Part shown: piece by piece, positions 38,354 to 64,000 of the stretch | Layout: every line of letters starts with the position of its first letter | Position numbering within the stretch: the stretch's first letter is position 1 | Assembly: GCF_039654945.1 (NCBI RefSeq) | Contig: NW_027361697.1 | Location: forward strand, 2,604,001-2,668,000 | Origin: Dendrobates tinctorius | Taxonomy: Eukaryota | Direction of reading: 5' to 3' | Length of the DNA stretch: 64,000 bases | Translations under genes and position numbers: made by a program | The notes under the pieces: generated by a model | Databases searched by the model: none | The model's input: the letters and a program-made list of their open reading frames with translations, nothing else | Told to the model about the DNA's origin: nothing

Positions 38354-38791
38354 GGCCGGTTTCACATTTGTGCATGGAGGAGCAGCGGAAGGCTGCGGAC
38401 TTCCTCCATTAAGCTCCGCCCACGGCCACACCGCCTCCGGTCAGCTCTGCCTCCGGCGGCATGCGGCCTGTGTACCCTATCTTTAGCATTAGGTATGCAG
38501 GCCATGCCGATGTATGTGGATACCTCCGCATGTGTCGTTTTGATGGTGCGGCGACCGCAACAAAATGCAACACGCTGTGTTCGGCGCAGGTCACCGCACC
38601 GTCAAAACGACACATGCGGAGGCATCCGCATACATCTGCATGGCCTGCATACCTAATGCTAAAGATAGGGTACACAGGCCGCATGCCAATGGAGGCGGAG
38701 CTGACTGGAGGAGGGGCAGACATGGGCGGAGCTTCATGGAGGAAGTCCGCAGCCCTCTGCAGCTCCTCTATATGCAAATGTGAAACCGGCC
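38354..38791. mobile_element. PIF/Harbinger-type MITE, near-perfect 438-bp palindrome
   Basis: TIR GGCCGGTTTCACATTTG perfect; 3-bp TSD ATA/ATA; whole element self-complementary (mirror ORFs on both strands). Confidence 0.9.
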
Positions 38792-39200
38792 ATACATGGC
38801 TTAAATCATACAGCCAGTGTATGATACATGCTGATAAATCCAGTTAGCTGTCAAGTTTTCTTTAAGGTGTATCTCAAAGGGATTTTCTAGTTTCAGGATA
38901 CCCCTATCCCCAGGAACGGGTTTAAAAAAAAAAAATAAAAAAAAAACTGCCTTACTCACAAAAAACCATGCTTAGATCTAGCAGAGAGTCTTCACTATTT
39001 CTCCCTGTTTGTTATTGTCTGTAGGACTGATATCAGGTCGACAGTAATGCAGCCAACCTGTGAGCTCAGTAGGTCGGAATGTCTTGTGCCTTCAAATTTG
39101 CAGATTTTACCTGGAAATTCGATTTGCAGCAAATATATTCACTGAGAGTTCTGTATTATGCTCTGTGGTCTGGAGAGACCCTAGAGAATAATAAATGTTA

Positions 39201-39632
39201 GGCTGGTTTCACACTTGCATTGGGCAGAGCTGCGGAGAGCTGCGTACTTCCTCCGTTAAGCCCTGCCCACTGCCGCACCTCTTCCATTCAGCTCTGCCTA
39301 CGTCTGCCTGTGTCCTGCGTACCTATCTTTAATATTGGGTACACAGGCCATGCTAATGTATGTGGATGCCTCCACTTGCGTCGCTTTGACGCTGCGCCGA
39401 ACTGCGTCGAACGCAACATGTTGCATTTTGTTGTGGTTGGCGCGTCAAAATGACGCAAGCGGAGGCATCCACTTACATCCACATGGCCTGCGTACCCAGT
39501 GTTAAAGATAGGTACGCAGGACGCAGGCAGACGTAGGCGAACTGAATGGAAGAGGTGCAGCAGTGGGTGGGGCATAACGGAGGAAGTACGCAGCCCTCTG
39601 CAGCTCCGCCCAACGCAAGTGTGTAATCAGCC
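39201..39632. mobile_element. PIF/Harbinger-type palindromic MITE, related to 38354-38791
   Basis: TIR GGCTGGTTTCACACTTGC / (rc) GGCTGATTACACACTTGC; flanks TTA/TAA; shared CCTATCTTTA..GGCCATG core. Confidence 0.88.
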
Positions 39633-42425
39633 TAAGATGTGGAAACAAAAAATCAGCTAATACCCAACTGTTCACCTCTCTGGCCACCTCTGGTGCTCGC
39701 TATCCCCCCTACGGTCCTTGTCTCCTATTTTTACCATCACTGCATACTAAAACCCAGGGCCTTTTCCCTTTTCCCTAGGCTGGGACTTCTAGTGATGTTG
39801 TGACCGTACAACCTGCATGCACAGAGACGTTCTGGTCCTTGTCACAGTCGAAATGCTCGCCCAAATGTGCGCATTGTAAAGTCATGGCTCACGATGTTAC
39901 AGTCTTATAGTACCTCAGTGCATTTATTGAACGCACAAGATTTAAATGAATAAAAATAAAAAAAAAGTAAAGCTATCTAAGGCTCTGTTCAAAATATGTG
40001 TGTATTACACACTTGCCGAACTCAAGTTTCGCCTACTTGGCTTCATCTGAGACATACCTTGCTGGAATTACAAGGCTTAACTACTGTATTGCAGTCTCGA
40101 TTGGCTTTTCCTTCATCCTTAGAATAGTGGAAGGTGAGACACAACTATTACCAAAGATCTGATGTTTGTGTCTACAAGCATCGTCTTAAGAGAGATATTG
40201 GTGTCACTGTACAATCTGTGGACATCTTCACATAAGTTTCTTCATCTGGGAAAAGTGTATGAAGAAACAAAATGAAAAATTTAAAAATTGCCTGGTCATG
40301 AAGCAATTAAAAACCCATTGAAAAAAGAATGCTTATTATTCCAAAATATTATTGGTCAAATTATTTTTTAAAAATCCTGGAGGTGTCTGTATCCTTTAAG
40401 TAAAAAAAAAAAAAAAAGGCCTAATTTTAACCATAAAACTGCTGAAAATCTGTATTTCTTTAAACAAGTCTCCAGTTTGTCTTATGCTTGCTTGATTGGT
40501 AAGCTAAATTATTAAGAAATTGTTATACTGTGCCCTGCTTTTACAAGTATTCCTCCAGCGAAGATAGCACTGTATCCCATTCTACAGTATCTATATATGT
40601 CTAATTGCATAATCAATATGCGTTACATTCCACCAATTAGCAGTTCGATGAATATTTTGCTGCTCTTTCCTTCTAAAAACAATTGATGTGCAATTTTATG
40701 TGATTAAATTTGACATGGATTTGTAAATGGATAGACTGATGAATCTGCTTTTCGGAATTATTGGAGTTATTTGCATATGTGTTAATTAATAAAAAAGTAT
40801 CAGACATAATTGCATATAGTGAAACGGATTGTAATATTCTAAGTCATTAAGATATTCACTATGATGTATTTTGTTGAGGGGGTATCACTGGAGGTTGTAC
40901 AAAGAGAATGACTATAAACTTTGCATAAAATGTGCAAGTACATTGCATAGTCACTAGATTTTAAACTTTTATCAAGTTAAATTGATTTTTTGCATAGTTA
41001 ATATAGATGAGTGAATGTGCTTGGTGATACTCGGATAGCACTTAAGTATCTGGGTGCGCTCGGATGTGCTTGGCACTGCTCAAGCATTAGCCAGTGCTTG
41101 AATTTCAAACTCGAATCCCCGCCCTGCATATTTGGCGCCTGTTACACAGCCAATAAGCATGAGGGGAATGCCTGTGAGTCATTGGATTCAATGACTCACC
41201 CATAGAGTATTACGTTCTTTGCGGTACATTTCGATGTTAAAAAACAATCCAAAAAAGCATTAAAGAAATTTTCTGGATTCAATTACTCACCAATATAGTA
41301 TTACGTGCTTTGCGGTACATTTTGGTGTTATATAACATTCCAACAAAGCATTGAAAAAAATTTCTGGTTTCAATTGCTCACCCTTACAGTATTACATGCT
41401 TTCTGTTAGTGTTCAGTGGTATATAACCCTCCAAAAAAGAGTTGAAATGTATTTCTGGATTCAGTTATTCATCTATAGAGTATTAGGAGTTCTCTGTTAC
41501 ATTTTGGTGGTATACACCACTCCAAAAAAGTGTTGAAAACTATTTCTGGATTAAATTAGTCATCCATAGAGTTTTACAAGCTTCCTTTAACTTTTGATGG
41601 TATATACAGTAACACTCCAAGAAAACATTGAAAAGTAAAATATTTCTGGTTTCAATTATTCACCCATAGAGTATTATGTGCTTTCTGGTACATTTCGGTG
41701 ATTTATAACACTCCAAAAAAGAGTTTAAAATTCTTTCTGTATTCAATTAATCATCCATAGAGTATTAAGTGCTTTCTGATAAATTTTGGTAGTATATAAC
41801 ACTACAAAAAAGCGCTGAAAAATATTTCTGTGTGCAATTAGTCATCCATAGAGTATTATGTACTTTGTGTTTGAATTTCAGTGGTATATAACACTACAAA
41901 AAAGCGTTGAAAAATATTTCTGGATTCAATTACATTAGTCATCCATAGAGTATTATGCGCTTTGTGTTAAATTTCGGTGGTATATAACACTACAAAAAAG
42001 CATTCAGATTTTTTTCTGGTTCAATTAGTCATCCATAAAGTATTACATGCTTTCTGTTAAATTTCAGGGGTATATAACAGTCCAAAGAAGCATTCAAAAA
42101 TATTTATAAATTCAATTAGTCATCCATAGATTATTTCATACTTTCTGTTAAATTTTGGTGGTATATAACACTACAAAAAAGCTATCAATTTTTTTTCTGG
42201 ATTGAATTTGTCATCCATACAGTATTATATGCTTTGTGTTATATTACAATATTATCTAAAACTTCGAAAAAAAAATTTCCTGGATTAATTAGTCATCTAT
42301 AAAGTTTAACACAGTTGTTTTAACATCATGGTAGTATATAAAACAAAAAAAAAAGTTCCAACATTTTTCCTCAATTTAATTAGTCTTCCATGCAGGATAA
42401 TGCTGTTTTTGTAACATTACGGTGG

Positions 42426-43072
42426 TTTCACAAATCATTAAGGGATTTGTGGCAACTCTGCATTTGTTGGAATTTAAATGTAGTTTTTTTCTTTGGTGCA
42501 GCAAGGATTAATGTCAGTCTCTTGCTGGCAGCTTCTTTAGTCAGCTAATATTGTTTGGTGACCACTCCTACCTTCCTTTAACTAAAGTTGTCACATGACT
42601 AATCAGCTGTTCGTCAGTCATTCAGTTATTTCTATGCAGACCAGCTTGGTGTGTGGAGTTCTCTTTTGGCTGTGGTATTGCCGCTGTTGAAGACCTGTTC
42701 ACCTGGTACCAATTACTTTGCTGCTGTGGAGCTTAGCAGCAGATTCTGAGCTTAGTGGCAATCTTTCTGTCAGTCCCTTGTTTGTCTCTTTCCCTGTGTA
42801 ATATCATCTGCAGTGGCAAGGCTAGTGACATTACCGGCCAGTACACTAGCTAAGGTTAAAAGAGATGACAGCCATGGACTAGGCACATGACAGTGACAGG
42901 GGGAAGGACCAGTATAGGGCATTAGGGGAGCTTAAGGATGGGCACAAGTTGGTGTCAGGAGGTGTCGCATCCCCTTCTCCATACCGATAGGGCCTTTCTC
43001 TCCCTTTATCATCCAGTGTACACATACATATGTTGGGTGGTCCATGGGACATACCAGTGTCCATTCATGACA
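42426..43072. mobile_element. Solo LTR inserted in the 91-bp array
   Basis: Ends T(T)TCACAAAT...ATTCATGACA (degenerate IR); perfect 5-bp TSD GGTGG (42421-42425, 43073-43077). Confidence 0.8.
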
Positions 43073-43087
43073 GGTGGTGTATAAAAC

Positions 43088-43338
43088 CATGGTGGCTCAG
43101 TGGTTAGCACTGCAGCCTTGCAGTACTGGAGTTCTGGGTTCAAATCCCACCAAAGACATCTGCAAGGAGTTTGTATGTTCTCCCCGTGTTTGTGTGGGGT
43201 TCCTCCCACATTCCAAAGACATACTGATAGGGAATTTAGATTGTGATCACCATTGGGGACAGCAATGATAATGTGTGCCAACTGTAAAGCACTGCGGAAT
43301 ATGTTAGCGCTATAAAAATAAACATTATTATAATTATT
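43088..43338 (+). mobile_element. tRNA-derived SINE (V-SINE type)
   Basis: A box TGGCTCAGTGG, B box GGTTCAAATCC, central GGAGTTTGTATGTTCTCCCCGTG..TCCTCC block, (ATT)n-like tail. Confidence 0.85.
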
Positions 43339-45396
43339 CTGGATTCAATTAGTCATCTATACAGTTTACCATGGTTATTGTTACATTACAGTGGTATATA
43401 AAGCTAAAATAAAGATATAATGTTTTTCTGGATTCAGTTAGTCATCCATACAATTTAACGCAGTTACTGTAACGTAACAGTGGCACATAAAAAAAGTTGT
43501 ATACCTGTAGCAGGCCAATTTTTGTTTTTAATTCAAACAAATGACATTTCACACAAACCAAGTTTTACTGTATGTATGACAATAGTTAATTTTTGGAACA
43601 AAAATATTCTTGTACCAGGTCAAGCAGTTTTTAAAAATTTTAAATCACCATAATTTTACACAAAGCAATTTTACACAAAGCATCCCCTCCTTGCACCAGC
43701 ACGTGCCCAGAAACATCATCCGTGCCTTTACTGACGTGGTTATTAGGATTATCCACTTAATGACCGACACATGGACAAGTGCTTGTGGCACATGTGCTAC
43801 TGACTTCATGGATTGCTGGCCCTACTTCTATCAGGGTTTCCTCTACTTCCTACACTAGTTCCTGCTCCCCTCCTGCTCCTTCTCCGAATCCTCCATCTCT
43901 GCTATATCAGAGCACGTCGTCCACATCAGTCGAAAGCTGGAAGCTCTGCAGCATTGCCTCAGCAAAGCGGCAACAGGCTCTGCTGAAGCTAATTTGTCTA
44001 GGAGACAAATCGCACAGCAGAGTTATTGAAAGGAATAACAGACAGGACAGATCTGTGGCTCTCCCTACTGAACCTCCATCCAGGCATGGTCGTGTATGAT
44101 AATGGCTGTAACCTGGTGGTAGCTGTCAGCTTGGCAAGCTCACACATGTACCTCCTTTATCTCTAATACAGGGTATATCTAAGTTCCTCTTCAATCGTAT
44201 TTTTGGCATTTATTGTTTCCTTCATAAATTAAACTGAAATTTCCAATGTTTTCATAAAAATTTAAATTTTGGTTTACTTAAATATTTTTTTAAATCCTTT
44301 TTAAATTTTGCCTTATATACAAGTCTTCATACAGGAAGGAATGTTACTTAACATTTTTTCCTGTAAACCATAATTTCTTCTCGATTTTCAATGGTTTATT
44401 GTCAGTCCTTAAGTGGTGTAAAAGTGTGACACCGTTGTTCTCGGCAGCGATCTGGGAGTCAGAGATGTTTTCCAGGAGTCTTACCCAGGTTGTGCTCCTT
44501 CCTTCCAGCACTTTTTCCATCCATTTCATCATTTTCATTGCCCCCCAGACCTCCCTGTAGGGTCTGCTTGAAAACTTCACGAGTTACCCATTGACTACCG
44601 TTATGTTCATTACTCAAAATGAGCATCCGAGCATTAGGAATTGCTCGGTTCGAGTAACGAGCATTTGAGCATTTTAGTGCTTGCTCATCTCTAAAAGTTT
44701 AGAAACATACCAAATAACGTTCAGTAAAAAAAATCTACCATTTTGCTGTTGCAGAGCAACTTTAAGTCCTTTATCTAGCCGAGATATTTTTGTAAAAGGC
44801 ACAAATCTTTCAGAGTTCCAGATCCTGGTTCAGTCTGCTCTCTCCCTCACTTCTTTTAGTGTTAGAGATATCAGCAGAAAGGGAAAGAAGGGTGTACAAA
44901 GATCTGCAGTGGCTTGAAGGAAATGTTGTTAAAGTTTTATGGGGAGCAGAGAATATAAATTCTAGACAACGTGGAACTCACATGAAGAGGAGATAGTTGC
45001 ACTATTAAACCAAGTGAAGACAGCAGTATCCTGGCTATACACAGCACTCACTACCAGCCTATATTACAGAGAGGGACACTGGCACAAAAAAAATTTGCAG
45101 CTTGAATCGGGATGCAAATTGAATATCAAGGAACTGGAAAACAAATCAAGGAATTAAGATTATAGACTGAAATGTAGTGCAATTATATTAATTGATGTTA
45201 TCCACTAACATATGTGAAGGTAATTATTTTTTCATGTCAAGTGTTTCCATAGCCTTTATATGCATAAAATATAAGTTATCCTGAATCTCTTTCCACAAAC
45301 TTGTATATCGATCTGTTCTGTCCTTCTGCTCTATGACACTTTGCTGAAAGAACAGACTGAATGTACAGTGCATTGCTTGCAAGGGGTTTCCTTTAC

Positions 45397-48805: not shown

Positions 48806-50119
48806 CAGTGGTGTAACTACAGAGTCTGATGGGCACCCATGCAAAATTCTGACCTTGCCCCCTCCCTTGCATGTTGTTGATTAGATGTATGGGCCATTGT
48901 AACATTCTCAATCCTATAAGGACAAACGTGTTGCCTTTCCTCCTCCATTATGTAGTAATGTTCCCCATTATGGTCCCTTTCCTGGTATATATGTCCCCCA
49001 TCTTGTTATACTGTAAATGTTCTCCATCATGGTCTCCTTCCTGGTATATATGTCCCCCATCCTCGTATATATGTTCTCCATCCTGGGCCTCTTCCTGGTA
49101 TTTGCCGTATGTGCAGGTAACGTAGAGGCGAATGGGTTAAATCTGCGCTGCCATGTTGAAAGGATGAAGGATGCCAATCCGAGTGTAGGTGGTATACGTG
49201 GTTGTCCTGAAGAAGTATGTGTACTTCGAAACGCGTTGACAAACCACCTACACTAGGATTGGCATCCCTCATCCTTTCAACATGGCAGCGCAGATTTAAT
49301 CCAGTCACTTCTCCATTACCTACACTTTCATCCTGTCATGGATCTGCAGCAGCCTAAGCATTACCAGTGGTTGTGTGCACGCAACCTGACCAGATGAGCA
49401 TCATTATCAATTCCTTTGTCATTTTACCCATAAAACACCCTATTTGCTCTCTGTGTCTTTCCAGTCTGCTTTTATTTGGATCCTAGTATTTATGACACCC
49501 ATCCTGGCATATATGTCTCCCACCTTAGTATATATGTCACCCATCCTTCTATATATGTCTTCCATCCTGGAATATATATACCCCATCCTGGGCCCATCCA
49601 GGTATATATGGCCCTCATCTTGGTATAAATCTCCTCCATAATGGGCTCATCCTGATAAAAATGTCTTCTATCCCTGAATATTCCCCATCCTGGTATATAT
49701 GTCCCCCATTCTGGTATATATGTCTCCAATCCCGGACCCATTCAGATATATATCCATCATTCTTCCACTGTTTTTTAACACACATAAAAAACAATTTTAC
49801 TCACCTTACCCCACTCCGACGCAGCGTGGTGTCCTCTTTTCTACCCGGCAGCTGAATTCAGTGTGCAAGCAATGAACAGTCCATTACTTTCAATGCCTTG
49901 TGCCCCCAAGCATGGGCACGCCGATGTCAGCTTCAGGTCTATGATTGGCCAGCGGCTTGCATGGCAGTGCAGGAACCTGGTGGATTTTGCGCCGAATGCA
50001 TTTTAACTGAATCTGCATCCTCAGACACACCTCCAGTTGAAATATGCACAGGCGGGTCCCCCTCCCGCACGGGTCCTTTCATGGTCGCACCCTCTGTGAC
50101 CGTGATCATTATGTCTTTG
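48806..50119. mobile_element. Non-autonomous hAT-like element with a ~24-bp minisatellite (48960-49750)
   Basis: CAGTGGTGTAAC ... ATTATGTCTTTG ends; flanks TTCAAACA/TTTAAACA (7/8 match, 8-bp TSD); CCATCCTGGTATATATGTCC units. Confidence 0.7.
49202..49242 (+). ncRNA. Minimal type I hammerhead-like ribozyme in a Penelope-type inverted-repeat insert (~49111-49490)
   Basis: UUGUC-CUGAAGA-[AGUAUGUGUACUUC]-GAAA-CGCG-UU-GACAA; stem I UUGUC/GACAA; palindromic stem III; flanked by 83-bp inverted arms. Confidence 0.65.
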
Positions 50120-51376: not shown

Positions 51377-51609
51377 CAAAGTATTGTGAAAATGCCTTTT
51401 AAAGGATGGATATTGACTGTTCAGTTTGCTCCTTTAATAAGTGGTATTAAATAGAGTTGAGCGAAACGGGTCGAAAAATTTCAAAAGTCGCCGACTTTTG
51501 GCAAAGTCGGGTTTCATGAAACGAAACCCGACCCTAGGATGAGGTCAGCCACGAGGTCGGCGACTTACGTGCCAAAGTCGCTTTTCAAAAGTTTGTTTTG
51601 TGCTCTTTT

Positions 51610-51765
51610 TCAGCCAATCAGGATCCACGGACCCTGTGGGCAACATGATGACATAGGCACGGGTCACCACCATCTTTCAGAAGGGCATGCAAGTGATTGG
51701 CTTGCTTTGGTGGGCGTCACAGGGGGTATAAAAGGGCGTGCACGCCGACCGCCATCTTACTTCTG
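51610..51765 (+). promoter_or_regulatory. Putative Pol II promoter of the hAT element
   Basis: AGCCAATCAG (~51612), inverted CCAAT (~51696), TATAAAAG (51727), CGCCATCTT (YY1-like, ~51750). Confidence 0.45.
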
Positions 51766-52299
51766 CCGATCTCAGTATAGGGAGAGGTTGCTGCTGATTC
51801 TGTAGGGAGAGCGTTAGGCAGGGAAGAAGACAAAAAAACTGCTTCTGCTGCTAGCGATTTGGCCTGCACAACACACCAGTCACTGTGTGTGCAGTGCAAG
51901 GGGAGGCTATATAGTGGTGTATCAGTGGTGTTGGTTGTTGGGCTGCCTTCTAAGGCTACTTTCACACATCAGGTTTTCGGCGTCAGGCGCGATCCGGCGT
52001 CGTGCCGGAATGCCAGATCCGGCAAATGTTTTGTAAAACCTGATGTGCCGGATCCGGTTTTCTGCCGGATCCGTCTTGTTCTTGACAGACAAAACCGGAT
52101 CCGTCTCATCCGGTTCATCCATTTTTCTATCCGTTTTTCGACGGATTACGCCGGATCTGGTTTTTAAAATTGACCCTTGTGGCCTTCCGAACGGGATTGG
52201 CTACTGGAAAACTATATATAGCATGTTCCTACAGCCCTTCTTTGACAGGTTGTAGAGGAGAAAGTGCAGGTTGGAGAGAAGAGCAAGTTACTGGCGAAG

Positions 52300-52425
52300 A
52301 TGGATGTTGTCATTGGAAATATTACCACTAGAAGTTCTGTGACGGTTTCAGTAATGAGGGACAATTTTGCACTATACTTTATGTCACCTCAAGGCAGAGT
52401 ACACTGGCAGGATGACAGAGTGTGA
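52300..52425 (+). pseudogene. Harbinger transposase remnant (41-aa in-frame N/C-terminal fusion)
   Basis: MDVVIGNITTRSSVTVSVMRDNFALYFMSPQGRVHWQDDRV*; RD.FA.YF.S..G.V.WQ resembles the typical Harbinger transposase C-terminus; AATAAA at ~52617. Confidence 0.75.
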
Positions 52426-52929
52426 AAGATTTGTGCCCTAACCAAACTTGTGTACCTTCTGGACCAACAGTATATACCTTTGCCAACCAAAGTTGGCTAT
52501 CTTGTCATGGTCTTACTATTTTTAGCTTTAGGCCACAGGTGTGTACCTGGTTGTGTTTTATGCAAAGTATTTCACCTTTTAACAAAAGTTGTGTACATTG
52601 TTAGGAAATCACCAACAATAAACACAACTTTTCAGGTGAAATACTTTGCTTCAAACACAACCAGGAACACAACTGTGGCAAAAAGCTAAAATTTACCCAC
52701 AGTTATATACCTGGTTTTGAATACCTTTTTACCTTTTAAATACCCTGTATTTAACCTTTTTTTTAAACATATTTCGCCGCAGAAAGAAATGACAGACAAC
52801 CAGTGTAAACAATAATTTAACTTTTATTTAAAATATTTTTTTTTGTGTAAACTGTTTTTAAAGTTAAAAAAACTTTTTTAATAAAGGTTTGAAACCAACC
52901 AAATGGGCATTTTTATTACAAAAAAAACA

Positions 52930-55496
52930 TTATAACCCGGTGTAGTGTGGGGTGGAAATACTGCTGGAGGGGCTGCGGGACACTTCGACAATGGGAGTGT
53001 GGAGAGAGGACTGGGATCGTGGTGGGGAAGGAACAGTTAGAGGTGATGGTGTGGAAAAAGCTACAGAATGGGTGGACATGTGGGAGGCAGAAGAGGTGGT
53101 GGGCGGTGGAGTGGAGGGTTGGGCAGGGACTGTAGGAGCAGATGATGTTGATGGAAAGTTGTATGGGGAAGGAGTTTGGTACGGGGAAGGAGTTTGGTAC
53201 GGGGCAGGTTGCTGGAAGTGGGGAGATGTCTGGTACTGGGGAGGTTGCTGGTACTGGGAAGGTTGCTGGTACTGGTGAGGTTGCTGGTATGTAATAGGAG
53301 GGGGAGGATGGAAAGTGGCTGGAGGGGGTGCAGATGTAATAGGAGGGGAGGATGGAAAGTGGCTGGAGGGGGTGCAGATGTAATAGGAGGAGGAGGAAGG
53401 AAAGTGGCTGGAGGGGGTGCAGGTGGAGGAACTACAGTGGTGGGAGGTGGAGGTTGGGAGGTAACCTGCTGTAGAGCACCGTGGCACGAATGCATTACAT
53501 GCATCTGCTGGGTAGGAGATAGTGTTGCCATGCGCTCCACAACAGACCTGAAAAAGGTGTGGTTTGGCGAAGATCTTGCTTCTGAATGCATGGTTTGCAG
53601 AAGTGTCTTCACCTCCAGAATGCTGGAGTTGATCTGCTGAAAGCCTGCGGAGATTTGCTCTGACAAGACTTTTAGACAGTTCTGGAAAGATGCATTCAGA
53701 TGCAAGAACTCTGGCGCATAACTCTTTTCCTGACCCCTCTGCCGCCCAGTACCCGCAGGTGTACTAGAGGTGGCAGGGGCAGAAGGGTGGGGTAAAGGGA
53801 AAGCGATCTCCTCACCAGCAGCTTCATGTAATGTAGGCGGCCACGATGCTCCTGTGCTGGTGGATGGGACAGATGGGTCGAATGTGTGGGAAGGCTGGGA
53901 AGGTGCAGATGTACTGGGGCGGTCGAAGTGTCCCTCGGTGCCGGTCTCCTCAGGGATCGCCTCAGAAGGGTCCAATCGTGCAGGCTCCCGAGTGCTGCTC
54001 ACCGTGCTGTGGAATAAAGAGAAAAAAAAACAATTAAAATACTGACATGGTATGGCCCTGGCTGAAAAAAAAAAGTTACATCTAACATTTTTTTTCACAT
54101 GTGGTGTGTAATTTTTACCTTCTAGTGACCATTGTTTCCCGGAGGAACGACAGGGCTTGTGCGTACTTGTACTTGCTCCTGCGTCCTCCAGATCCACTCG
54201 GGGCCCGCATCTCTTTATTGAACTCCTTCTTGAAACGATCCCTCACAGACCGCCACCGATTCACAATTCTGTTCCCTGAAACGAGAAAGGAGTGGTTAGT
54301 ATACAACATCAGTGTTTCACAAACTCCAGTCCTCATGGTCCCCAGGGGTCATGTTTTCAGGATTTCCATAGTAAATAGAAATCCTGAACACATGATCCGT
54401 GGGGACCACGAGGACTGGAGTTCGGGAAACACTGGTTTACATCAAGCAACCGGTACTGTATATACTTACGCTCTTTAATCTGGGCCCGAACATCGAGGTC
54501 CTCCAAGCGGCCCACAAGGAGCGAACAGATTTCCTCCCAGAGTCGTCGGGTAACGATAAGGTCAGCGTGGCGGCGGTCAGCCATATTCCAGAGCGGCTCC
54601 CTTTCTCTGACGAGATCGATGAGGTGGTCCACATCGAGTCCTCCATCCTCACCGTCAGAGTCGGGAGCACGCTGTGAAGGCTGTTAAAGAAAAAGACAAA
54701 AATAACATAATTAGCCTCCACAAAAGAAATGAAATAAAAAGTGCAAAAAAACAAAGCAAAAATATTTATACTTACACGCTGGTGACCGCCGCGTTGCTGT
54801 CGCCGACGACCCTGGGAGGCACTGCGAGGACCTCTTGGCCGAGCACCAGATTGGGAAGACTAGAGAAGAAAACAAAAAATGTTATGTCTTTGGATGTAGG
54901 CATTTGTTTGCTGTGTGTGGTCTGCAGAACATTGTTTTCTATGTGTTGTGTGTAGTGTGATGTTGTGTTTCTGCGTTTGATGCAAAAAACTTACCAATTG
55001 TGAGCCCACTCCAAGTGTCTGTCCACCCCTTCCTTCTTCTTCTGGGAGCTCCTCTTCATCTTGTGAATCCTGTTTTGAAATAAAAGGCAATGAATAGACA
55101 TATATTACAGAGATGATGGATTTTGGAAATAAAAACTTACCGTCAAACGCTGACGATGCGAGGGAGGGCTCCCAGAAGATGATGTGCTGTCTTCCTGGTG
55201 GCCACACTCCATGCCTGTGGGTGGTGTTCCAGCTGCTGCCATTGCTGCTGCTGCTGCTGCATCTATTGGGCGGCTGTTGAATAAAGAGAAACAAAGGGCC
55301 AATGAATATCTTGATATTCAATAGCCCTAGTTTGGAGGAATGGGGGATTTGATAATTACCGTCTCTCATCTGCTGCTGGCCTCCCCTCCTCAGCATGTTC
55401 CATTTGCTGCTCCATTTGGGGTGGTGGTGGTGCTGATGGTGCTGCAGTGGTCTCCTGCCTTCTCCTGCTGCGCTTGGTTGCTTTCTTGGGTGGCAT
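52930..55496 (-). CDS. Harbinger MADF/Myb-SANT DNA-binding protein, 7 exons (55496-55360, 55273-55141, 55069-54995, 54859-54776, 54680-54470, 54275-54119, 54006-52930)
   Basis: All six introns GT..AG with pyrimidine tracts and matching phases; MPPKK start downstream of TATATAAAA (~55535); MADF LIDLVREREPLW..LWEEI..RWRSVRDRFKKE..YKYAQALSFL; 1-bp frameshift in a G run at ~53345 (580 aa as read, 624 aa if corrected). Confidence 0.88.
54310..54434. mobile_element. 125-bp palindromic hAT-like MITE in intron 5 of the MADF gene
   Basis: CAGTGTTTCACAAACTCCAGTCCTC ... GAGGACTGGAGTTCGGGAAACACTG; TSD not evident. Confidence 0.75.
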
Positions 55497-56211
55497 GTTG
55501 GGTGTGGCTGTGGGTCCCACTGTCTTGCTTTTATATATGTCTTGTGGGCAGAGCTACTGAGCATGCTCAGACCAAAAAAACCGGATCCGGCCACCGGATC
55601 CGGCTTTCGCCGGATCAGGCGCATTGCGGCGCTCATAGGCTTTCATTGTGTGAAAAAGCCGGACGCTCCGGATGCGGCGTGTCCGGCTTTTTCGCCGGAG
55701 ACAAAAAACGTTACAGTAGCCGTTTTTTCCAGACGCCGGATCGCGACACATTGCCGGATCCGGCGAAAACTGGATGAAACGCATGGCCATCCGGCGCGAT
55801 CCGGCGCAAATGCAAGTCAATGGGGGGAAACCGGATCCGGCATTGCATTTCGCCGGATCCGGTTTCTGTCAAAAGCGCCGGATCGCGCCTGAAGGCGAAA
55901 ACCTGATGTGTGAAAGAGGCCTAAAGCTTCCTGACATTCCTGCATTGCTGTTTACCCACTGCTCTGCAAACTGCTTTTTTAAAAGCAATCCCAATTTTTT
56001 TTTTTTCTCCTGCTGAGAAGAAAAAAAAACTGCTTCTGCTGCTAGCAATTTGGCCTGCACAACACACCAGTCACTGTGTGTGCAGTGCAAGGGGAGGCTA
56101 TATTGTGGTGTATTAGTGGTGTTGGTTGTTGGGCTGCCTTTTAAGGCTTCCTGACAGGCTGGCATTGCTGTTTACCCACTGCTCTGCAAACTGCTTTTTT
56201 AAAAGCAATCC

Positions 56212-57778
56212 AATCTCCCTTATCCTCTAGTCACTTTTGTCACAGCTGTGCCATCGAGCCTGTGACATAGCGCTCAGATATCAGTGGGCCTCACACAATC
56301 CAAAAGTGTCCAGCGTCCACAAGTGTCTGCAGAAATTCAAAATCTCCCTTATCCTCTAGTCACTTTGGTCACAGCTGTGCCATCGAGCCTGTCACATAGC
56401 GCTCAGATATTCATTGGGCCTCACACAATCCAAAAGTGTCCAGTGTCCAAAAGTGTGTGCAGAGATTCAAAATCTCCCTTATCCTCTAGTCACTTTGGTC
56501 ACAGCTGTGCCATCGAGCCTGTCACATAGCGCTCAGATATTCATTGGGCCTCACACAATCCAAAAGTGTCCAGTGTCCAAAAGTGTGTGCAGAGATTCAA
56601 AATCTCCCTTATCCTCTAGTCACTTTGGTCACAGCTGTGCCATCGAGCCTGTCACATAGCGCTCAGATATTCATTGGGCCTCACACAATCCAAAAGTGTC
56701 CAGTGTCCAAAAGTGTGTGCAGAGATTCAAAATCTCCCTTATCCTCTAGTCACTTTGGTCACAGCTCTGCCATCGAGCCTGTCACATAGCGCTCAGATAT
56801 TCATTGGGCCTCACACAATCCAAAAGTGTCCAGTGTCCAAAAGTGTGTGCAGAGATTCAAAATCTCCCTTATCCTCTAGTCACTTTGGTCACAGCTGTGC
56901 CATCGAGCCTGTCACATTGCGCTCAGATATTCATTGGGCCTCACACAATCCAAAAGTGTCCAGTGTCCAAAAGTGTGTGCAGAGATTCAAAATCTCCCTT
57001 ATCCTCTAGTCACTTTGGTCACAGCTCTGCCATCGAGCCTGTCACATAGCGCTCAGATATTCATTGGGCCTCACACAATCCAAAAGTGTCCAGTGTCCAA
57101 AAGTGTGTGCAGAGATTCAAAATCTCCCTTATCCTCTAGTCACTTTGGTCACAGCTGTGCCATCGAGCTTGTCACATAGCGCTCAGATATTCATTGGGCC
57201 TCACACAATCCAAAAGTGTCCAGTGTCCAAAACTGTGTGCAGAGATTCAAAATCTCCCTTATCCTCTAGTCACTTTGGTCACAGCTGTGCCATCGAGCCT
57301 GTCACATTGCGCTCAGATATTCATTGGGCCTCACACAATCCAAAAGTGTCCAGTGTCCAAAAGTGTGTGCAGAGATTCAAAATCTCCCTTATCCTCTAGT
57401 CACTTTGGTCACAGCTCTGCCATCGAGCCTGTCACATAGCGCTCAGATATTCATTGGGCCTCACACAATCCAAAAGTGTCCAGTGTCCAAAAGTGTGTGC
57501 AGAGATTCAAAATCTCCCTTATCCTCTAGTCACTTTGGTCACAGCTGTGCCATCGAGCCTGTCACATAGCGCTCAGATATTCATTGGGCCTCACACAATC
57601 CAAAAGTGTCCAGTGTCCAAAAGTGTGTGCAGAGATTCAAAATCTCCCTTATCCTCTAGTCACTTTGGTCACAGCTGTGCCATCGAGCCTGTGACATAGC
57701 GCTCAGATATCAGTGGGCCTCACACAATCCAAAAGTGTCCAGTGTCCACAAGTGTCTGCAGAAATTCAAAATCTCCCC
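56212..57778. repeat. 130-bp tandem array, 12 units
   Basis: AATCTCCCTTATCCTCTAGTCACTT at 56212, 56341, then every 130 bp to 57641; nearly identical units. Confidence 0.98.
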
Positions 57779-57853
57779 TGTCCTATAGACACCTTGTACC
57801 TTGTTTTACATTACTATATAGTTTGTTGGATTTTGTCTACATTTCTACCAAAA

Positions 57854-60800
57854 ATGAGGAAGGCTGGTGGAAGAGGCCGTGGAATTGGGCGGGGGTTGGC
57901 AGCTGGTAATGATGGTGTTGGTGGTGGATCTGATGGTAGTGGCAAGAGCAAAATAGGACCGAATGCAGGAGGTGCTGACCCTGCGTCATCGTCTGGCTAC
58001 ATAAGGCCTCGAACGCTTAGTTTTCTAGGAGTTGGCAAACCGCTTTTAAAGCCAGAGCATCAGGAAAAAGTTTTGTCTTACATTGCTGACTCAGCCTCCA
58101 GCTCTATCGCCTCCTCTTCTTCAGTTGTAAAAAGTAAAAGCACTGAGTCGTCATTGGAGGCTCATGTTCATGAACCACACCTTTCCTTGTGTCCTTCACC
58201 CCAACCAAGATTGAAGGATGACGCAGGCCATACTACTGATTACTCCATGGAGCTGTTTTCACATACCATGCCTGGATTATCAAGTGAAATGGTGAATTAC
58301 CCAGGCCAAGATGAATCTGACATGGAGTGCACTGATGCACAGCCGCTGATGGATGATTCTGCTGGTACATTCACTCAGAGCACTACATTGTCCTCGCAGT
58401 GTACAGAGCCAGATTCTGACCCTGATGAGACTCAGGTGCCCCTTCCCGCACACTATACCACCATACACGGTGACACAGAGGAAGGTGCACATGACATAGA
58501 AGAGGAGGTGATGGATGACCCAGTTGTTGACCCAGATTGGCATCCATTGGGGGAAGAGGGTGCTGCTTCCAATAGCTCAGATGAGGAGCATCCACAGCAG
58601 ACATCGACATCGCAACAGCTGTTATCTGGCAGGCCCGGAGCACTCCAAAGACAGGTTCCAAACATCAAAAGAGTTGCTGGACAGCTTGTCCAGAGGGTCA
58701 AAAGATCACAGCGTGCTAGGCCGCAAAATGTCTGCCAAAGTAGGAAGAGTGCAGTGTGGCACTTTTTTGAACAAAATCCTCATGATCAGGCCAAGGTTAT
58801 CTGTAAGAAGTGCGCAAAGACCTTTAGCCGAGGGAAAAATCTGAAAAATTTGAATACCAGTTGCATGCTTAGACATTTAACCAGCATGCACTTGCAAGCG
58901 TGGACACAACACCAAACCTCAAGTGCCACATGTGCAACTGATCACAACGAAGGTAGTCAGCAACGCTACATTGTTTCCCCCACTGTAAGCCCACCGGTTA
59001 GCACAGCAGCAAATGTTGAGGTGTCGTTGCAAGGTCACAGCAGTCAGGGAATCCCACTGTTATATCAACGAAAGACTGATTCTAGGCCATCAGAAAGAAC
59101 ACCAACTCCATCACCATCATCAACCCTCTCTCAGTCCGCCCTGTCCACCGCTACTTCCACCATATGCAGCTCTCAAGTCCAGCTCACCCTCCCAGACACT
59201 ATGAGTAGGTCAAGAAAGTACTCAGTCTCTCATCCGCGTACACTGGGTTTGAACGCCCACATTGCCAAACTAATCTCGTTTGAGATGATTCCCTTTCGGT
59301 TGGTGGAAAGCACAGCTTTCCGCGAACTCATGGCCTATGCAGTACCACGCTATGACCTACCCAGTCGCCACTTCTTCTCTCGCAAAGCCATCCCAGCCCT
59401 CCACCATCATGTGAAAGACTGCATTGTCCATGCACTCAAGCAGTCAGTGAGCGGAAAGGTGCACCTCACAACTGATGCATGGTCCAGTCGGCATGGCCAG
59501 GGCCGTTACGTGTCCATCACTGCGCACTGGGTTAATGTGGTGGATGCAGGGTCCACAGGGGACAGCGGTGGTGGGACAGTGCTGCCTAGCCCACGGTATA
59601 GGAAACAGTTGGCTGTAGGCGTTCGACCCTCCTCCTCCTCCTCCAGAAGCGAAAGCTCGTCCACAGAGCGCAGTCGTACGAGCACTCCATCTGCAGCTGC
59701 CACTGTTGCACACGATGTGTCCCCCTATCGAGCAGCTAGTGGAAAGCGTCAGCAGGCTGTGTTGCAGATTATGTGTTTGGGCAACAGACACACCGCCGAG
59801 GTGCTGGCCGAGTACTTGAAGCGACAAACTGAGTCATGGCTGGGCAGTGTACATCTTGAGGCAGGCAAGGTAGTTAGTGATAACGGCCGTAATTTTGTGG
59901 CAGCCATAGCCCTTTCAAAACTCAGCCATATACCTTGCTTGGCTCACACCTTGAACCTGGTGGTGCAGTGCTTCCTCAAAAATTATCCGGAGTTAACAGC
60001 CCTGCTCCAGAAGGTGCGAAGACTGTGCGCGCACATCCGCCGGTCGCCTGTACACTCCGTTCGTATGCAGAAGCTGTAGCGATTGCTCCACCTTCCCAAC
60101 CACCGCCTCATTATCGATATTGCAACAAGGTGGAACTCCACCCTGCACATGGTGGAGCGGCTGTGCGAGCAGAGGCAGGCCATAATGCATTTGTGGGAGG
60201 ATACACGGCCAGGCACTTTGAGAGCAGACATGGAGTTGACAGGTGTGCAGTGGTCGAAGCTGAAAGACCTCTGTAAAGTCCTTCAGTGTTTTGAGGAATG
60301 CAAACGGCTGGTAAGCGCAGACGACGCCATCATAAGCATGAGCATCCCACTTATGCATCTGTTCATGCAAACTTTGACGCACCTTAAGGAGCAGGCGTCT
60401 GCAGCCAATGTTGATGAGGAGGAAGAGGAGGAGGGAATCCTTGATGACATTCAGCCATTGTCTGCTCAAGGACCTCTCCTGGACGAGGTGGAGGAAGAAG
60501 AGGAGGAGGAGGAGGATGATGGGGATGATTACTTAGGGGAGGAGGATGCATTTTGTGGGGCAAGTGAAAATGTTGGCGTGGCAAGGTCTGGTACAGGGTT
60601 TGTGCGTGACTGGAGGGATGTGGATTTGCCAGAAAGTGCTCCTCCAACCAGCACTCGCAGTGCATCATTGACACCGGGAACATTGGCCCACATGTCAGAT
60701 TATGCCTTGCAGATCCTAAAAAGGGACCCACGCATTGCCAAAATGATGAACGATGACGACTACTGGTTGGCCAGCATACTGGATCCACGCTATAAAGGCA

Positions 60801-61390
60801 AATTACAAAACATCATGCCACAGGAGAACCTTGACCTAATATTGGCTAATAAACAAGCAACTCTGGTAAATCGGTTGCTTGAGGCATTCCCAGCACACAG
60901 CAGCGGTGATGGTTCTCACACGAGCCGTACAGGCTGGGGGCAGCTTGGCAGAGGTGTTCGTGGTGCACACAGCAGAAGTGGCGTTGGAGACAGGGGTTTC
61001 ATGACAATGTTGTGGACTGATTTTTCAAGTACCGCTCACACAACTGGTAATACTGCATCGATGGAAAGTGATAGGAGACAGCAGTTGTCAACTATGGTTA
61101 CAAACTACTTTTCCTCCCATATCGATGTTCTCCCACACAGGTCATTCCCCTTTGACTATTGGGCCGCTAAACTGGACACCTGGCCTGAATTGGCACAATA
61201 TGCCTTACAGGAGCTCGCTTGCCCAGCTGCAAGTGTGCTATCGGAAAGAGTCTTCAGTGCAGCTGGATCAATCCTGACAGAAAAAAGGACCCGTCTGTCA
61301 ACCCAAAATGTGGATGATCTAACCTTCATTAAAATGAACCACGCATGGGTTTCCAAGGATTTTGTCCCACCTTCCTCTGATGACACATAG
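57854..61390 (+). pseudogene. hAT transposase with BED zinc finger (ZBED-like), ~1178 codons, single in-frame TAG at 60077-60079
   Basis: BED SAVWHFF..CKKC..LRHLTSMH; catalytic TTDAW, VSDNGRN, CLAH, ATRWNST, SVLSERVFS; C-terminal dimerisation region; ORFs 57713-60079 and 60083-61390 share one frame. Confidence 0.95.
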
Positions 61391-61809
61391 GGTGACAGAA
61401 AAATGGCTTGCTTTGGTCCACCTCTTCCTGGGACTTGACCTATTTCACCTTTTGCATCAGCTGAATGTCCAACATCAACATATGCCACTTTCTAAAACTC
61501 CCTAACTGTGCTGCCTCCCCCCCCCATGGCCGGGGTCACCACCTAGCGCACGACACCGTGCGAGTGCCGTTGCCCTGGACAGGTGGGTAGGCCGACTCTT
61601 GGGCGCGGGCACTGGTACAGGGTCCTTCATAGTGCAATCAAGTGTCTCTGACGGTGGTGGTGCACACCCGCCGTCAGACACACCGCCGTACTATGAGGGG
61701 CCCAGTGCCAGTACCGACGCCCACGAGTGGGCCCCCCTTGCTTGGGCAGGGCCCAAGCTTTTGCAATATTTACCTCTCCCTGCTCCTCCGCTGTGTAGTC
61801 TGGGCCGTC

Positions 61810-64000
61810 AAATCCATACTGTGCCTGACACCATCTGAGCCTGCCTCCTGATGTATAGACATATATTTTGAATGTGTACGCTATCCATACATGTTATCCG
61901 GGGAAACGGTACCCTTTCTAACCCTTGTGCAATCACGTGCAATCCATACTGGGCCTAACACCGTCTGAGCCTGCCTCCTGAGACATATATTTTGAATGTG
62001 TACGCTATCCATACATGTTATCCGGGGATACGGTACCCTTTCTAACCTTTGTGCAATCACGTGCAATCCATACTGGGCCTAACACCGTCTGAGCCTGCCT
62101 CCTGAGACATATATTTTGAATGTGTACGCTATCCATACATGTTATCTGGGGATACGGTACCCTTTCTAACCTTTGTGCAATCACGTGCAATCCATACTGG
62201 GCCTAACACCGTCTGAGCCTGCCTCCTGAGACATATATTTTGAATGTGTACACTATCCATACATGTTATCCGGGGATACGGTACCCTTTCTAACCTTTGT
62301 GCAATCACGTGCAATCCATACTGGGCCTAACACCGTCTGAGCCTGCCTCCTGAGACATATATTTTGAATGTGTACGCTATCCATACATGTTATCTGGGGA
62401 TACGGTACCCTTTCTAACCTTTGTGCAATCACGTGCAATCCATACTGGGCCTAACACCATCTGAGCCTGCCTCTTGAGACATATATTTTGAATGTGTACG
62501 CTATCCATACATGTTATCCGGGGATACGGTACCCTTTCTAACCTTTGTGCAATCACGTGCAATCCATACTGGGCCTAACACCGTCTGAGCCTGCCTCCTG
62601 AGACATATATTTTGAATGTGTAGGTTATCCATACATGTTATCCGGGGATACGGTACCCTTTCTAACCTTTGTGCAATCACGTGCAATCCATACTGGGCCT
62701 AACACCGTCTGAGCCTGCCTCCTGAGACATATATTTTGAATGTGTAGGTTATCCATACATGTTATCCGGGGATACGGTACCCTTTCTAACCTTTGTGCAA
62801 TCACGTGCAATCCATACTGGGCCTAACACCGTCTGAGCCTGCCTCCTGAGACATATATTTTAAATGTGTACGCTATCCATACATGTTATCCGGGGAAACG
62901 GTACCCTTTCTAACCTTTGTGCAATCACGTACAATCCATACTGGGCCTAACACCGTCTGAGCCTGCCTCCTGAGACATATATTTTGAATGTGTACGCTAT
63001 CCATACATGTTATCCGGGGATACGGTACCCTTTCTAACCTTTGTGCAATCACGTGCAATCCATACTGGGCCTAACACCGTCTGAGCCTGCCTCCTGAGAC
63101 ATATATTTTGAATGTGTACGCTATCCATACTTCTTATCCGGGGATACGGTACCCTTTCTAACCTTTGTGCAATCACGTGCAATCCATACTGGGCCTAACA
63201 CCGTCTGAGCCTGCCTCCTGAGACATATATTTTGAATGTGTACGGTATCCATACATGTTATCCAGGGATACGGTACCCTTTCTAACCTTTGTGCAATCAC
63301 GTGCAATCCATACTGGGCCTAACACCGTCTGAGCCTGCCTCCTGAGACATATATTTTGAATGTGTACGCTATCCATACATGTTATCCGGGGAAACGGTAC
63401 CCTTTCTAACCTTTGTGCAATCACGTGCAATCCATACTGGGCCTAACACCGTCTGAGCCTGCCTCCTGAGACATATATTTTGAATGTGTACGCTATCCAT
63501 ACATGTTATCCGGGGATACGGTACCCTTTCTAACCTTTGTGCAATCACGTGCAATCCATACTGGGCCTAACACCGTCTGAGCCTGCCTCTTGAGACATAT
63601 ATTTTGAATGTGTACGCTATCCATACATGTTATCCGGGGAAACGGTACCCTTTCTAACCTTTGTGCAATCACGTGCAATCCATACTGGGCCTAACACCGT
63701 CTGAGCCTGCCTCCTGAGACATATATTTTGAATGTGTACGCTATCCATACATGTTATCCGGGGAAACGGTACCCTTTCTAACCTTTGTGCAATCACGTGC
63801 AATCCATACTGGGCCTAACACCGTCTGAGCCTGCCTCCTGAGACATATATTTTGAATGTGTACGCTATCCATACATGTTATCCGGGGATACGGTACCCTT
63901 TCTAACCTTTGTGCAATCACGTGCAATCCATACTGGGCCTAACACCGTCTGAGCCTGCCTCCTGAGACATATATTTTGAATGTGTACGCTATCCATACTT
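61810..64000. repeat. 124-bp tandem array, >=17 units, continues past the window end
   Basis: Exact 124-bp period (repeated ORFs at 61881, 62005, 62129 ...); KpnI site GGTACC in each unit. Confidence 0.98.

What the first reader, a model, noticed from the sequence alone, without database searches (positions are those of the whole stretch)
51452..64000. Giant hAT transposon with its transposase between two homogeneous satellite arrays
Seen: left TIR and promoter-like motifs at 51452-51765; a 12 x 130-bp array ending ~75 bp before the ATG; a ~1178-codon transposase; then a >=17 x 124-bp array. An older relative at 41002-44693 has the same layout (TIR, ~91-bp array, homologous transposase remnant) with a different monomer. 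Known: typical autonomous hAT elements are a few kb. Inference: this lineage repeatedly builds internal satellite arrays next to its transposase and may generate and disperse satellite DNA, or use the arrays as binding or chromatin platforms.
Basis: partly seen in the sequence, partly recalled or inferred. Interest (0 to 1): 0.8.

Follow-up and report, generated by a model that had tools for sequence, protein, structure and literature searches.

The report
Frog hAT transposon flanked by repeat arrays
This is a young but disabled copy of a frog-specific hAT "jumping gene" whose transposase gene sits between two very uniform tandem-repeat arrays. Related frog elements show the same layout, so it illustrates the known way transposons carry satellite-like DNA rather than a new kind of element.

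Summary
The features are real, but the description needs four corrections.

- **Arrays.** There are 12.2 x 130 bp at 56212-57796 and at least 17.6 x 124 bp from 61811 to the window end. Inner monomers are 98.4-100% identical.
- **Transposase gene.** The 1,178-codon ORF (57854-61390) encodes zf-BED and hAT dimerisation domains. It carries one in-frame TAG at 60077-60079, so this copy cannot make full-length transposase.
- **Size.** About 4 kb of the "giant" size is a nested Harbinger-like element (51954-55921, TAA duplicated on both sides). The native element is at least 8.6 kb, 44% of it arrays.
- **"Older relative" (41002-44693).** It is an internally deleted hAT of a different subfamily. It is about 32% identical in protein, shares no DNA similarity, and has an upstream array only.
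- **Right end.** The right TIR and TSD lie outside the window and could not be tested.

Three Ranitomeya imitator gene models read this left-end sequence directly upstream of the orthologous transposase. This ties the TIR at 51452 to the gene.

Three of four frog-derived relatives with enough flank also carry tandem repeats 35-70 bp before the ATG. Two also carry them 100-120 bp after the stop. Their upstream monomers are unrelated to one another.

The arrays share no motif with the subterminal AAGTCG repeats.

Another note of this scan (s1-362309, same genome, unchecked) describes a similar full-length copy.

The most likely reading is passenger minisatellites expanding in the element's two non-coding spacers. 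Interest is modest.

The parts
51444..51451 (.). 8-bp left flank GTATTAAA, the presumed target-site duplication half
   Evidence: Read directly. T at position 2 and A at position 7 fit the Ac-type hAT target pattern (general knowledge). The right copy lies outside the window.
51452..51465 (+). Left terminal inverted repeat TAGAGTTGAGCGAA
   Evidence: The R. imitator model P0003 translates the same terminal sequence: 'RVERNGS.NIFKSRRLLAKSGF' against this window's 'RVERNGSKNFKSRRLLAKSGF'.
51466..51600 (+). Subterminal region with five copies of AAGTCG/CGACTT (51485-51580)
   Evidence: 5 of the 11 occurrences in the whole 64-kb window lie here, and none lies in the arrays.
51600..51770 (+). Promoter-like module: CCAAT at 51614, ATTGG at 51696, TATAAAA at 51727. 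The left end 51452-51830 has CpG o/e 0.9.
   Evidence: Motif matches only; no transcript data.
51825..51953 (+). First copy of a ~195-bp twofold tandem duplication, 5' part, cut by the nested insertion
   Evidence: 51825-51952 matches 56016-56143 at 96%.
51954..55921 (.). Nested Harbinger-like element, not part of the hAT, flanked by TAA at 51951-51953 and 55922-55924
   Evidence: (I8: 47-nt arms, 91%). The sequences on either side rejoin co-linearly with the uninterrupted copy.
55925..56211 (+). 3' part of the first ~195-bp unit (55925-56015) and the complete second unit (56016-56211)
   Evidence: 55925-55991 matches 56146-56211 at 94%.
56212..57796 (+). Upstream array, 12.2 x 130 bp. Ten inner 130-bp copies lie between two older 129-bp variant copies.
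   Evidence: The first and last monomers are 127/129 identical to each other and share six differences from the inner consensus.
57854..61390 (+). Intronless hAT transposase gene of 1,178 codons, broken by TAG at 60077-60079 into pieces of 741 and 436 codons
   Evidence: It has zf-BED, the RNase-H-like core motifs (TTDAW, SDNG, PCLAH, RWNST, SERVFS) and the hAT dimerisation domain. It is 66-78% identical to Ranitomeya proteins.
61590..61733 (.). Imperfect ~145-nt palindrome in the 3' spacer
   Evidence: DNA fold -68.7 kcal/mol, z = -6.25.
61811..64000 (+). Downstream array, at least 17.6 x 124 bp, running off the window. The first copy is a 130-bp variant, 91% identical.
   Evidence: There is no AATAAA or ATTAAA between the stop codon and the window end.
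41002..44693 (+). Separate, old, internally deleted hAT of another subfamily. It has an 11.5 x 91-bp array (41183-42245) and a ~175-residue transposase remnant (43601-44261).
   Evidence: The flanks ATAGTTAA and AAAGTTTA match at 6 of 8 positions.

Best explanation
Positions 51452 to the window end are the left ~12.5 kb of one recently inserted copy of an anuran-specific, Ac-like (ZBED4/6-like) hAT DNA transposon. The copy is now disabled.

Its native order is:
1. 8-bp target site.
2. TIR.
3. Subterminal AAGTCG repeats.
4. CCAAT/TATA promoter-like module.
5. A twofold ~195-bp duplication.
6. The 130-bp array.
7. A 58-84-bp A-rich leader.
8. An intronless 1,178-codon transposase gene.
9. A 420-bp spacer holding a palindrome.
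10. The 124-bp array.
11. A right end that is not in the window.

The copy is dead for two reasons: a nonsense codon in the gene, and a 4-kb Harbinger-like element that landed in the 5' spacer.

The arrays are most likely passenger minisatellites. The two non-coding spacers between the essential ends and the ORF tolerate change. Short duplications there probably expand by replication slippage, unequal exchange, or misaligned synthesis during gap repair after excision. If so, they would travel with the element when it moves.

**Shown:** the anatomy, the family assignment, in-place expansion from older edge monomers, and recurrence of the layout in relatives with unrelated monomers.

**Inferred:** the expansion mechanism, that the arrays are carried through transposition, and that they have no required function.
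For: - **Domains and motifs:**
- **Closest proteins are all from frogs,** with dendrobatids nearest.
- **The N-terminal Arg-Gly start is conserved** in L001, L003, L004 and L005.
- **Left end linked to the transposase** in three R. imitator gene models on three contigs.
- **The nested insertion is cleanly delimited:**
- **The array grew in place.** The first and last 130-array monomers share six differences from ten near-identical inner copies. Variants are shared among non-adjacent inner monomers.
- **The layout recurs in relatives:**
  - L001 has at least 2 x 307 bp ending ~70 bp before the ATG.
  - L004 has 56-bp repeats ~45 bp before the ATG and 36-bp repeats 100 bp after the stop.
  - L005 has a 122-bp repeat ending ~35 bp before the ATG and 36-bp repeats ~120 bp after the stop.
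  - All these contigs begin or end inside the arrays.
- **Upstream monomers turn over quickly.** L004 and L005 are 90% identical in protein but have unrelated upstream monomers and homologous downstream ones.
- **The 130-, 124- and 91-bp monomers are unrelated** to one another.
- **Other hAT-type elements in the window also hold internal arrays:** 13915-16741 (perfect 8-bp TSD) and 41002-44693.
Against: - The right TIR and TSD were not seen.
- Only one copy of this family is in the window, so it is not shown that the arrays were present before insertion or that they vary between copies.
- L003 has no array in the 750 bp upstream of its ORF.
- The recurring position 35-85 bp upstream of the ATG could reflect a function rather than mere tolerance.
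- The sample of relatives is small: four contigs with usable flanks, all short.
Confidence: 0.7

Rival explanations
1. The arrays are functional cis-regulatory parts of the element. The upstream array would act as a multimerised promoter or enhancer just ahead of the ATG. The downstream array would act as a 3' UTR, terminator or insulator module. Selection would keep 'an array' at these positions while the monomer sequence turns over.
For: - An array ends 35-85 bp before the ATG in the window, L001, L004 and L005, even though the monomers are unrelated.
- The expanded inner 130-bp variant carries an ATTGG (inverted CCAAT) that the older edge variant lacks.
- Every L004 monomer carries ATATAAAAG.
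- There is no poly(A) signal between the stop codon and the window end, so a transcript would run into the 124-bp array.
Against: - No motif is common to the upstream arrays of the different relatives.
- L003 lacks an upstream array.
- The 130-bp array has CpG o/e 0.3, as expected for methylated, silenced DNA.
- A stronger canonical CCAAT/TATA module lies near the TIR instead.
- There are no transcript data.
Confidence: 0.2
2. The arrays are extended transposase-binding platforms, that is, expanded subterminal repeats. The precedent is the tandem repeats bound by the THAP domain in Galileo's long TIRs.
For: - hAT transposases bind short subterminal repeats (general knowledge).
- There is a precedent in the P superfamily (PMC3688188).
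- The arrays lie between the ends and the ORF.
Against: - The subterminal motif AAGTCG (five copies in 51485-51580) is absent from both arrays.
- Shared 7-9-mers between the left end and either monomer are no more than in shuffles.
- The two arrays are unrelated to each other, whereas binding sites at the two ends would be expected to match.
- The arrays begin 0.8 kb (native distance) or more inside the end.
Confidence: 0.05
3. The arrays expanded only at this locus after insertion, or are partly an assembly artefact of a repeat-rich region. On this reading they are not a property of the mobile family.
For: - Only one copy could be examined.
- The expansion clearly happened in place, from edge variants.
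- Near-identical monomers are hard to assemble.
Against: - Relatives in other frogs have arrays at the same positions.
- An unchecked note of this scan (s1-362309) reports another full-length copy in the same genome bracketed by two ~130-bp arrays.
Confidence: 0.15
4. The TIR at 51452 belongs to a different, unrelated element, and the transposase gene with its arrays is not bounded by it.
For: - About 6.4 kb separates the TIR from the ATG.
- A foreign element lies between them.
- The right end was not seen.
Against: - Once the cleanly delimited insertion is removed, the sequence is continuous.
- Three R. imitator gene models on three contigs place the homologous left-end sequence directly upstream of the orthologous transposase in the same orientation.
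Confidence: 0.04

Closest known systems
Ac-like hAT transposons and their ZBED4/ZBED6-like relatives annotated in frog genomes (Ranitomeya, Dendrobates, Phyllobates, Anomaloglossus, Leptodactylus, Engystomops)
   Same: zf-BED, an RNase-H-like core, the hAT dimerisation domain, and a TAGAG-type TIR. The left flank fits the 8-bp nTnnnnAn target pattern. It is 66-78% identical in protein to Ranitomeya entries.
   Different: The transposase is long (~1,100-1,180 aa) with an Arg-Gly-rich N-terminus, and the ORF is bracketed by tandem arrays. This copy has a premature stop and a nested insertion.
MITE-borne satellites of Xenopus: miDNA4-Xt (Scalvenzi and Pollet 2014) and Xstir/Xmix (Hikosaka and Kawahara 2004), as summarised in PMC12628747 and PMC9659126
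   Same: A TIR-bounded DNA transposon in a frog carrying an internal satellite-like array that could be spread by transposition.
   Different: Those elements are short and non-autonomous, with one array. miDNA4 is Tc1/mariner-type. Here a transposase-encoding hAT carries two unrelated arrays, one on each side of the gene.
Helentron / DINE-1 / CgHINE central tandem repeats (PMC7492417)
   Same: Conserved element ends, with variable satellite-like arrays inside that differ between subfamilies.
   Different: Those are rolling-circle elements, mostly non-autonomous, with a single central array.
Galileo (P superfamily) long TIRs with tandem repeats bound by the THAP domain (PMC3688188, PMC4168063)
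   Same: An autonomous cut-and-paste element with tandem repeats between its tips and the transposase gene.
   Different: Galileo's repeats are part of symmetric long TIRs and contain transposase-binding sites. Here the two arrays are unrelated and lack the subterminal motif.
FEDoR dispersed element of Rana temporaria (PMC12054243)
   Same: A dispersed frog element rich in tandem-repeat motifs, with TSDs and inverted repeats and a short hAT-like similarity in its flank.
   Different: FEDoR has no ORF and no assigned superfamily.

Membership tests
hAT superfamily | N-terminal BED zinc finger | tested here: met
   PF02892, E 9.5e-12, 45 bits against a cut-off of 20.6.
hAT superfamily | RNase-H-like catalytic core with the conserved D, D, CxxH, RW and E motifs | tested here: met
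   TTDAW, SDNG, PCLAH, RWNST and SERVFS are present and fall in invariant or nearly invariant columns of alignment A1. RWNST and SER.FS align to the Hermes transposase. The core is interrupted by a TAG between the second D and RW.
hAT superfamily | C-terminal hAT dimerisation domain | tested here: met
   PF05699, E 7.4e-12. It matches the Hermes C-terminus at E 1.9e-11.
hAT superfamily | Short terminal inverted repeats at both ends | tested here: inconclusive
   The left TIR is present at 51452 and is consistent with R. imitator P0003, which translates to nearly the same peptide (21 of 22 residues) across it. The right end lies beyond position 64000.
hAT superfamily | 8-bp target-site duplication | not testable with these tools
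   Only the left flank GTATTAAA is in the window. A neighbouring element with a near-identical TIR (13915-16741) has a perfect 8-bp TSD, GTCATGAT.
Autonomous (transposase-competent) element | Uninterrupted transposase reading frame | tested here: not met
   In-frame TAG at 60077-60079.
Satellite DNA in the strict sense | Abundant long arrays at many loci, independent of the element | not testable with these tools
   Within the window the monomers occur only in the two arrays. No other DNA of this genome, or of related frog genomes, could be fetched. Look-ups by sequence were blank, which is uninformative.
Transposon-borne satellite-like arrays (miDNA4, Xstir, Helentron type) | The array lies inside a TIR-bounded mobile unit, and its copy number varies between copies | tested here: inconclusive
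   The arrays lie inside the left boundary, but the right boundary was not seen. Relatives carry arrays at the same positions. Variation between copies of this family was not measurable.

The most novel reading that the evidence does not exclude
In an anuran-wide clade of long-transposase hAT elements, an 'array - transposase - array' layout is a selected, heritable architecture. Fast-evolving tandem arrays would serve as replaceable promoter or UTR modules, or as silencing decoys. By transposition they would seed new satellite families across these multi-gigabase frog genomes.
Probability: 0.15. Interest if true: 0.6.

Novelty: new variant of a known kind. Interest (0 to 1): 0.35.

Why it matters
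Transposons are a recognised source and vehicle of satellite DNA. The review PMC9659126 states that non-autonomous elements prevail among the documented sources. A transposase-encoding hAT clade that repeatedly carries young arrays on both sides of its gene, with monomers replaced even between close relatives, would give a tractable vertebrate system. It could be used to watch arrays being born, expanded and dispersed in very large frog genomes.

There is also a practical point. Pieces of these elements are being annotated as exons of host genes: P0003, P0006 and P0012 fuse hAT ends to fibronectin, cadherin and reverse-transcriptase models. This copy on its own is an ordinary dead transposon.

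Tried and rejected
Array content of Ranitomeya copies is therefore unknown.
- **Viral-contig scan** with the transposase alignment: no relatives.
- **Second protein search to find more relatives on readable contigs:** it returned only chromosome-scale frog entries and contigs already held.
- **Look-ups of earlier findings by sequence** (130-bp dimer, left end): blank, which is uninformative.
- **Common origin of the 130-, 124- and 91-bp monomers:** rejected. Alignment scores were within the range of shuffles.
- **Arrays as carriers of the subterminal motif:** rejected.
- **Arrays as RNA gene clusters** (5S-size monomer): rejected. No Rfam match near gathering score and no tRNA.
- **Pfam on long ORFs inside the nested element:** nothing. 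Its MADF gene claim was not pursued.
- **PDB sequence search with the N-terminal core piece:** no hit.
- **Bacterial-type promoter scan:** irrelevant and empty.
Full report
**What is in the sequence**

Tandem Repeats Finder reports two strong arrays. One is 56212-57796 (period 130, 12.2 copies, 97% matches, score 2988). The other is 61811-63998 (period 124, 17.6 copies, 97% matches, score 4147) and runs off the window.

BLAST of single monomers shows that inner copies are 98.4-100% identical. The copies at the array edges are 91-95% identical. Inside the 64-kb window the monomers occur nowhere else.

Between the arrays lies one reading frame from the ATG at 57854 to the stop at 61388-61390.
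- The 5' piece has a BED zinc finger (PF02892, E 9.5e-12).
- The 3' piece has the hAT dimerisation domain (PF05699, E 7.4e-12).
- The 3' piece also aligns to the C-terminus of the Hermes transposase, including RWNST and SER.FS.
- The motifs TTDAW, SDNG and PCLAH fall in invariant or nearly invariant columns of an alignment with 12 relatives (A1).
- In that alignment the stop falls where the consensus reads Gln.

The gene is therefore a hAT transposase gene with a single nonsense codon.

**The left end and what lies between it and the gene**

TAGAGTTGAGCGAA starts at 51452 and is preceded by GTATTAAA. The next ~130 bp hold five copies of AAGTCG/CGACTT. After that come CCAAT (51614), ATTGG (51696) and TATAAAA (51727). 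The left end 51452-51830 keeps CpG o/e 0.9.

The 6.4 kb between TIR and ATG is not all hAT. A 47-nt inverted repeat (91%) bounds 51953-55922, and TAA is duplicated on both sides. The flanks 51825-51952 and 55925-55991 match 56016-56143 and 56146-56211 co-linearly.

So a Harbinger-like element inserted into the first copy of a twofold ~195-bp duplication. I confirm its boundaries but did not test its gene content.

Without the insertion, the part of the hAT inside the window is 8,578 bp, of which 3,775 bp is array.

**Does the TIR belong to this transposase?**

The closest proteins are from dendrobatid poison frogs: R. variabilis at 66-73% and R. imitator fragments at 73-80%.

Three R. imitator gene models on three different contigs (P0003, P0006, P0012) begin their hAT-derived part with the same peptide. 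That peptide is a translation of the homologue of 51461-51673. They then continue into the homologue of 58412 onward.

P0003 reads across the TIR itself as 'RVERNGS.NIFKSRRLLAKSGF'. The same frame here gives 'RVERNGSKNFKSRRLLAKSGF'.

These models are annotation chimeras, not evidence of splicing. They do show that this left end sits upstream of this transposase, in the same orientation, in another species. I take the link as established. The right TIR and TSD remain unseen.

**How the arrays grew**

The first and last monomers of the 130-bp array are 129 bp long and 127/129 identical to each other. They share six differences from the consensus of the ten inner copies. A derived variant therefore expanded between two older copies.

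Inner copies share single variants in non-adjacent monomers, for example position 36 in copies 4, 6 and 9. This fits repeated unequal exchange or slippage.

The 124-bp array starts with a 130-bp, 91% variant. Many of its variants sit at CpG sites.

The 130-, 124- and 91-bp monomers are unrelated to one another. None shares k-mers with the subterminal region beyond chance, and none contains AAGTCG. No RNA family or tRNA is present in them.

A ~145-nt imperfect palindrome lies in the 3' spacer (61590-61733; z = -6.25). No canonical poly(A) signal lies between the stop codon and the window end.

**Relatives**

Frog genome DNA could not be fetched. However, one ENA contig (L001), one Logan contig (L002) and three metagenome contigs (L003-L005) encode intact transposases of 1,080-1,144 aa (1,080 aa counted from the first ATG of L005, 1,089's TTG start). 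They are 60-69% identical to proteins of other frogs, except L002, whose best frog match is 39% identical. All but L002 share the Arg-Gly-rich start. The contigs at 60-69% are evidently frog host DNA in those samples.

| Contig | Upstream of the ATG | Downstream of the stop |
|---|---|---|
| L001 | At least 2 x 307 bp (97%), from the contig start to ~70 bp before the ATG | No array in 280 bp |
| L004 | 56-bp repeats from the contig start to ~45 bp before the ATG | 36-bp repeats from 100 bp after the stop to the contig end |
| L005 | 122-bp repeat ending ~35 bp before the ATG | The same 36-bp array ~120 bp after the stop |
| L003 | No array in 750 bp | Only ~100 bp available |
| L002 | Too little flank (92 bp) | No array in 247 bp |

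L004 and L005 are 90% identical in protein. Their downstream arrays are homologous, but their upstream monomers are unrelated.

So three of four relatives with usable upstream flank share the layout, and the upstream monomers turn over quickly.

Inside the window, two other hAT-type elements also hold internal arrays:
- 41002-44693.
- The foldback element 13915-16741, which has a perfect 8-bp TSD.

**The "older relative"**

Positions 41002-44693 have TIR-like ends (TATAGATGAGTGAA and TAGAGATGAGCAAG) and flanks matching at 6 of 8 positions. The element also has a CCAAT motif and then an 11.5 x 91-bp array at 77% matches.

Its transposase remnant covers only ~175 residues. It is ~32% identical to the young gene (E 3e-5 and 6e-4) but 60-69% identical to P0009 and L003. 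There is no DNA similarity to the young element and no downstream array.

It is a deleted member of another subfamily of the same frog clade, not an older copy of this family. As an independent case of an array just inside the promoter-like end it supports the general pattern, but not a direct lineage.

**Interpretation**

The best-supported reading is a dead copy of a frog Ac-like hAT whose two non-coding spacers carry passenger minisatellites.
- The in-place expansion is shown.
- The mechanism (slippage, unequal exchange, or misaligned gap repair after excision) and carriage through transposition are inferred.
- The recurring position just upstream of the ATG leaves room for a regulatory role, which I rate at about 0.2.
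- The binding-platform idea is not supported by motif content.
- Whether the monomers also exist as free satellites could not be tested.

**Relation to what is known**

Transposon-borne satellite-like arrays are well documented.
- In Xenopus, miDNA4 and Xstir/Xmix are MITE-borne satellites.
- Helentrons carry central tandem repeats.
- Tetris and Galileo carry tandem repeats in their ends.
- These cases are reviewed in PMC9659126 and PMC12628747. Galileo's bound repeats are described in PMC3688188.
- A repeat-rich dispersed element, FEDoR, is described in Rana temporaria (PMC12054243).

The review PMC9659126 states that non-autonomous elements prevail as sources. In six literature searches I found no description of a transposase-encoding hAT clade with arrays on both sides of the gene.

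I therefore file it as a variant of a known kind, of modest interest. Another note of this scan reports a full-length copy in the same genome bracketed by two ~130-bp arrays (s1-362309). It is unchecked and counts only as a lead.

Noticed in passing
window 13915-16741: A hAT-bounded foldback element. Its TIR is TAGTGTTGAGC, with a perfect 8-bp TSD (GTCATGAT) and subterminal TATCGG/ATACCG motifs. It has 571-nt inverted arms at 97%, with 61-bp arrays in inverted orientation near both ends and TACATAC-type microsatellites in the middle.
   Followed up: partly
window 51954-55921: A Harbinger-like element with 47-nt inverted ends and a TAA TSD, nested in the hAT 5' spacer. Its long ORFs have no Pfam match. 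It also holds a 60-nt-arm hairpin at 54310-54434 and G-rich 18-44-bp repeats at 53161-53422.
   Followed up: partly
window 32440-32858 and 49039-49732: A 29-bp x 14.7 array whose monomer contains CTCATCCCTA, the reverse complement of the hAT TIR core TAGGGATGAG. TIR-like matches lie at 32325 and 32778. Looser 21-bp repeats that look similar by eye lie at 49039-49732.
   Followed up: no
window 61590-61733: A ~145-nt imperfect palindrome between the transposase stop codon and the 124-bp array (DNA fold z = -6.25). Another note of this scan (s1-366862) lists a hairpin at the same relative position in a hAT of this genome.
   Followed up: partly
P0003, P0006, P0012 (Ranitomeya imitator gene models): Public gene models fuse host or retroelement exons (fibronectin type III, cadherin, reverse transcriptase) to translated hAT left-end sequence and transposase fragments. 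These are annotation chimeras caused by this transposon family.
   Followed up: partly
L001, L003, L004, L005: Contigs filed under metagenome assemblies encode intact ~1,100-aa hAT transposases 60-69% identical to frog proteins. They are evidently frog host DNA in those samples.
   Followed up: partly
window 38354-39638: A cluster of long inverted repeats, with arms of 97-203 nt at 81-89% complementarity, just upstream of the old hAT.
   Followed up: no
window 35361-36452: A 365-bp x 3 tandem repeat at 75% matches.
   Followed up: no
window 47316: A solo TAGAGATGAGCAAA, matching 13 of the 14 bases of the right TIR of the old hAT at 44693. It is possibly the left end of another copy of that family.
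   Followed up: no
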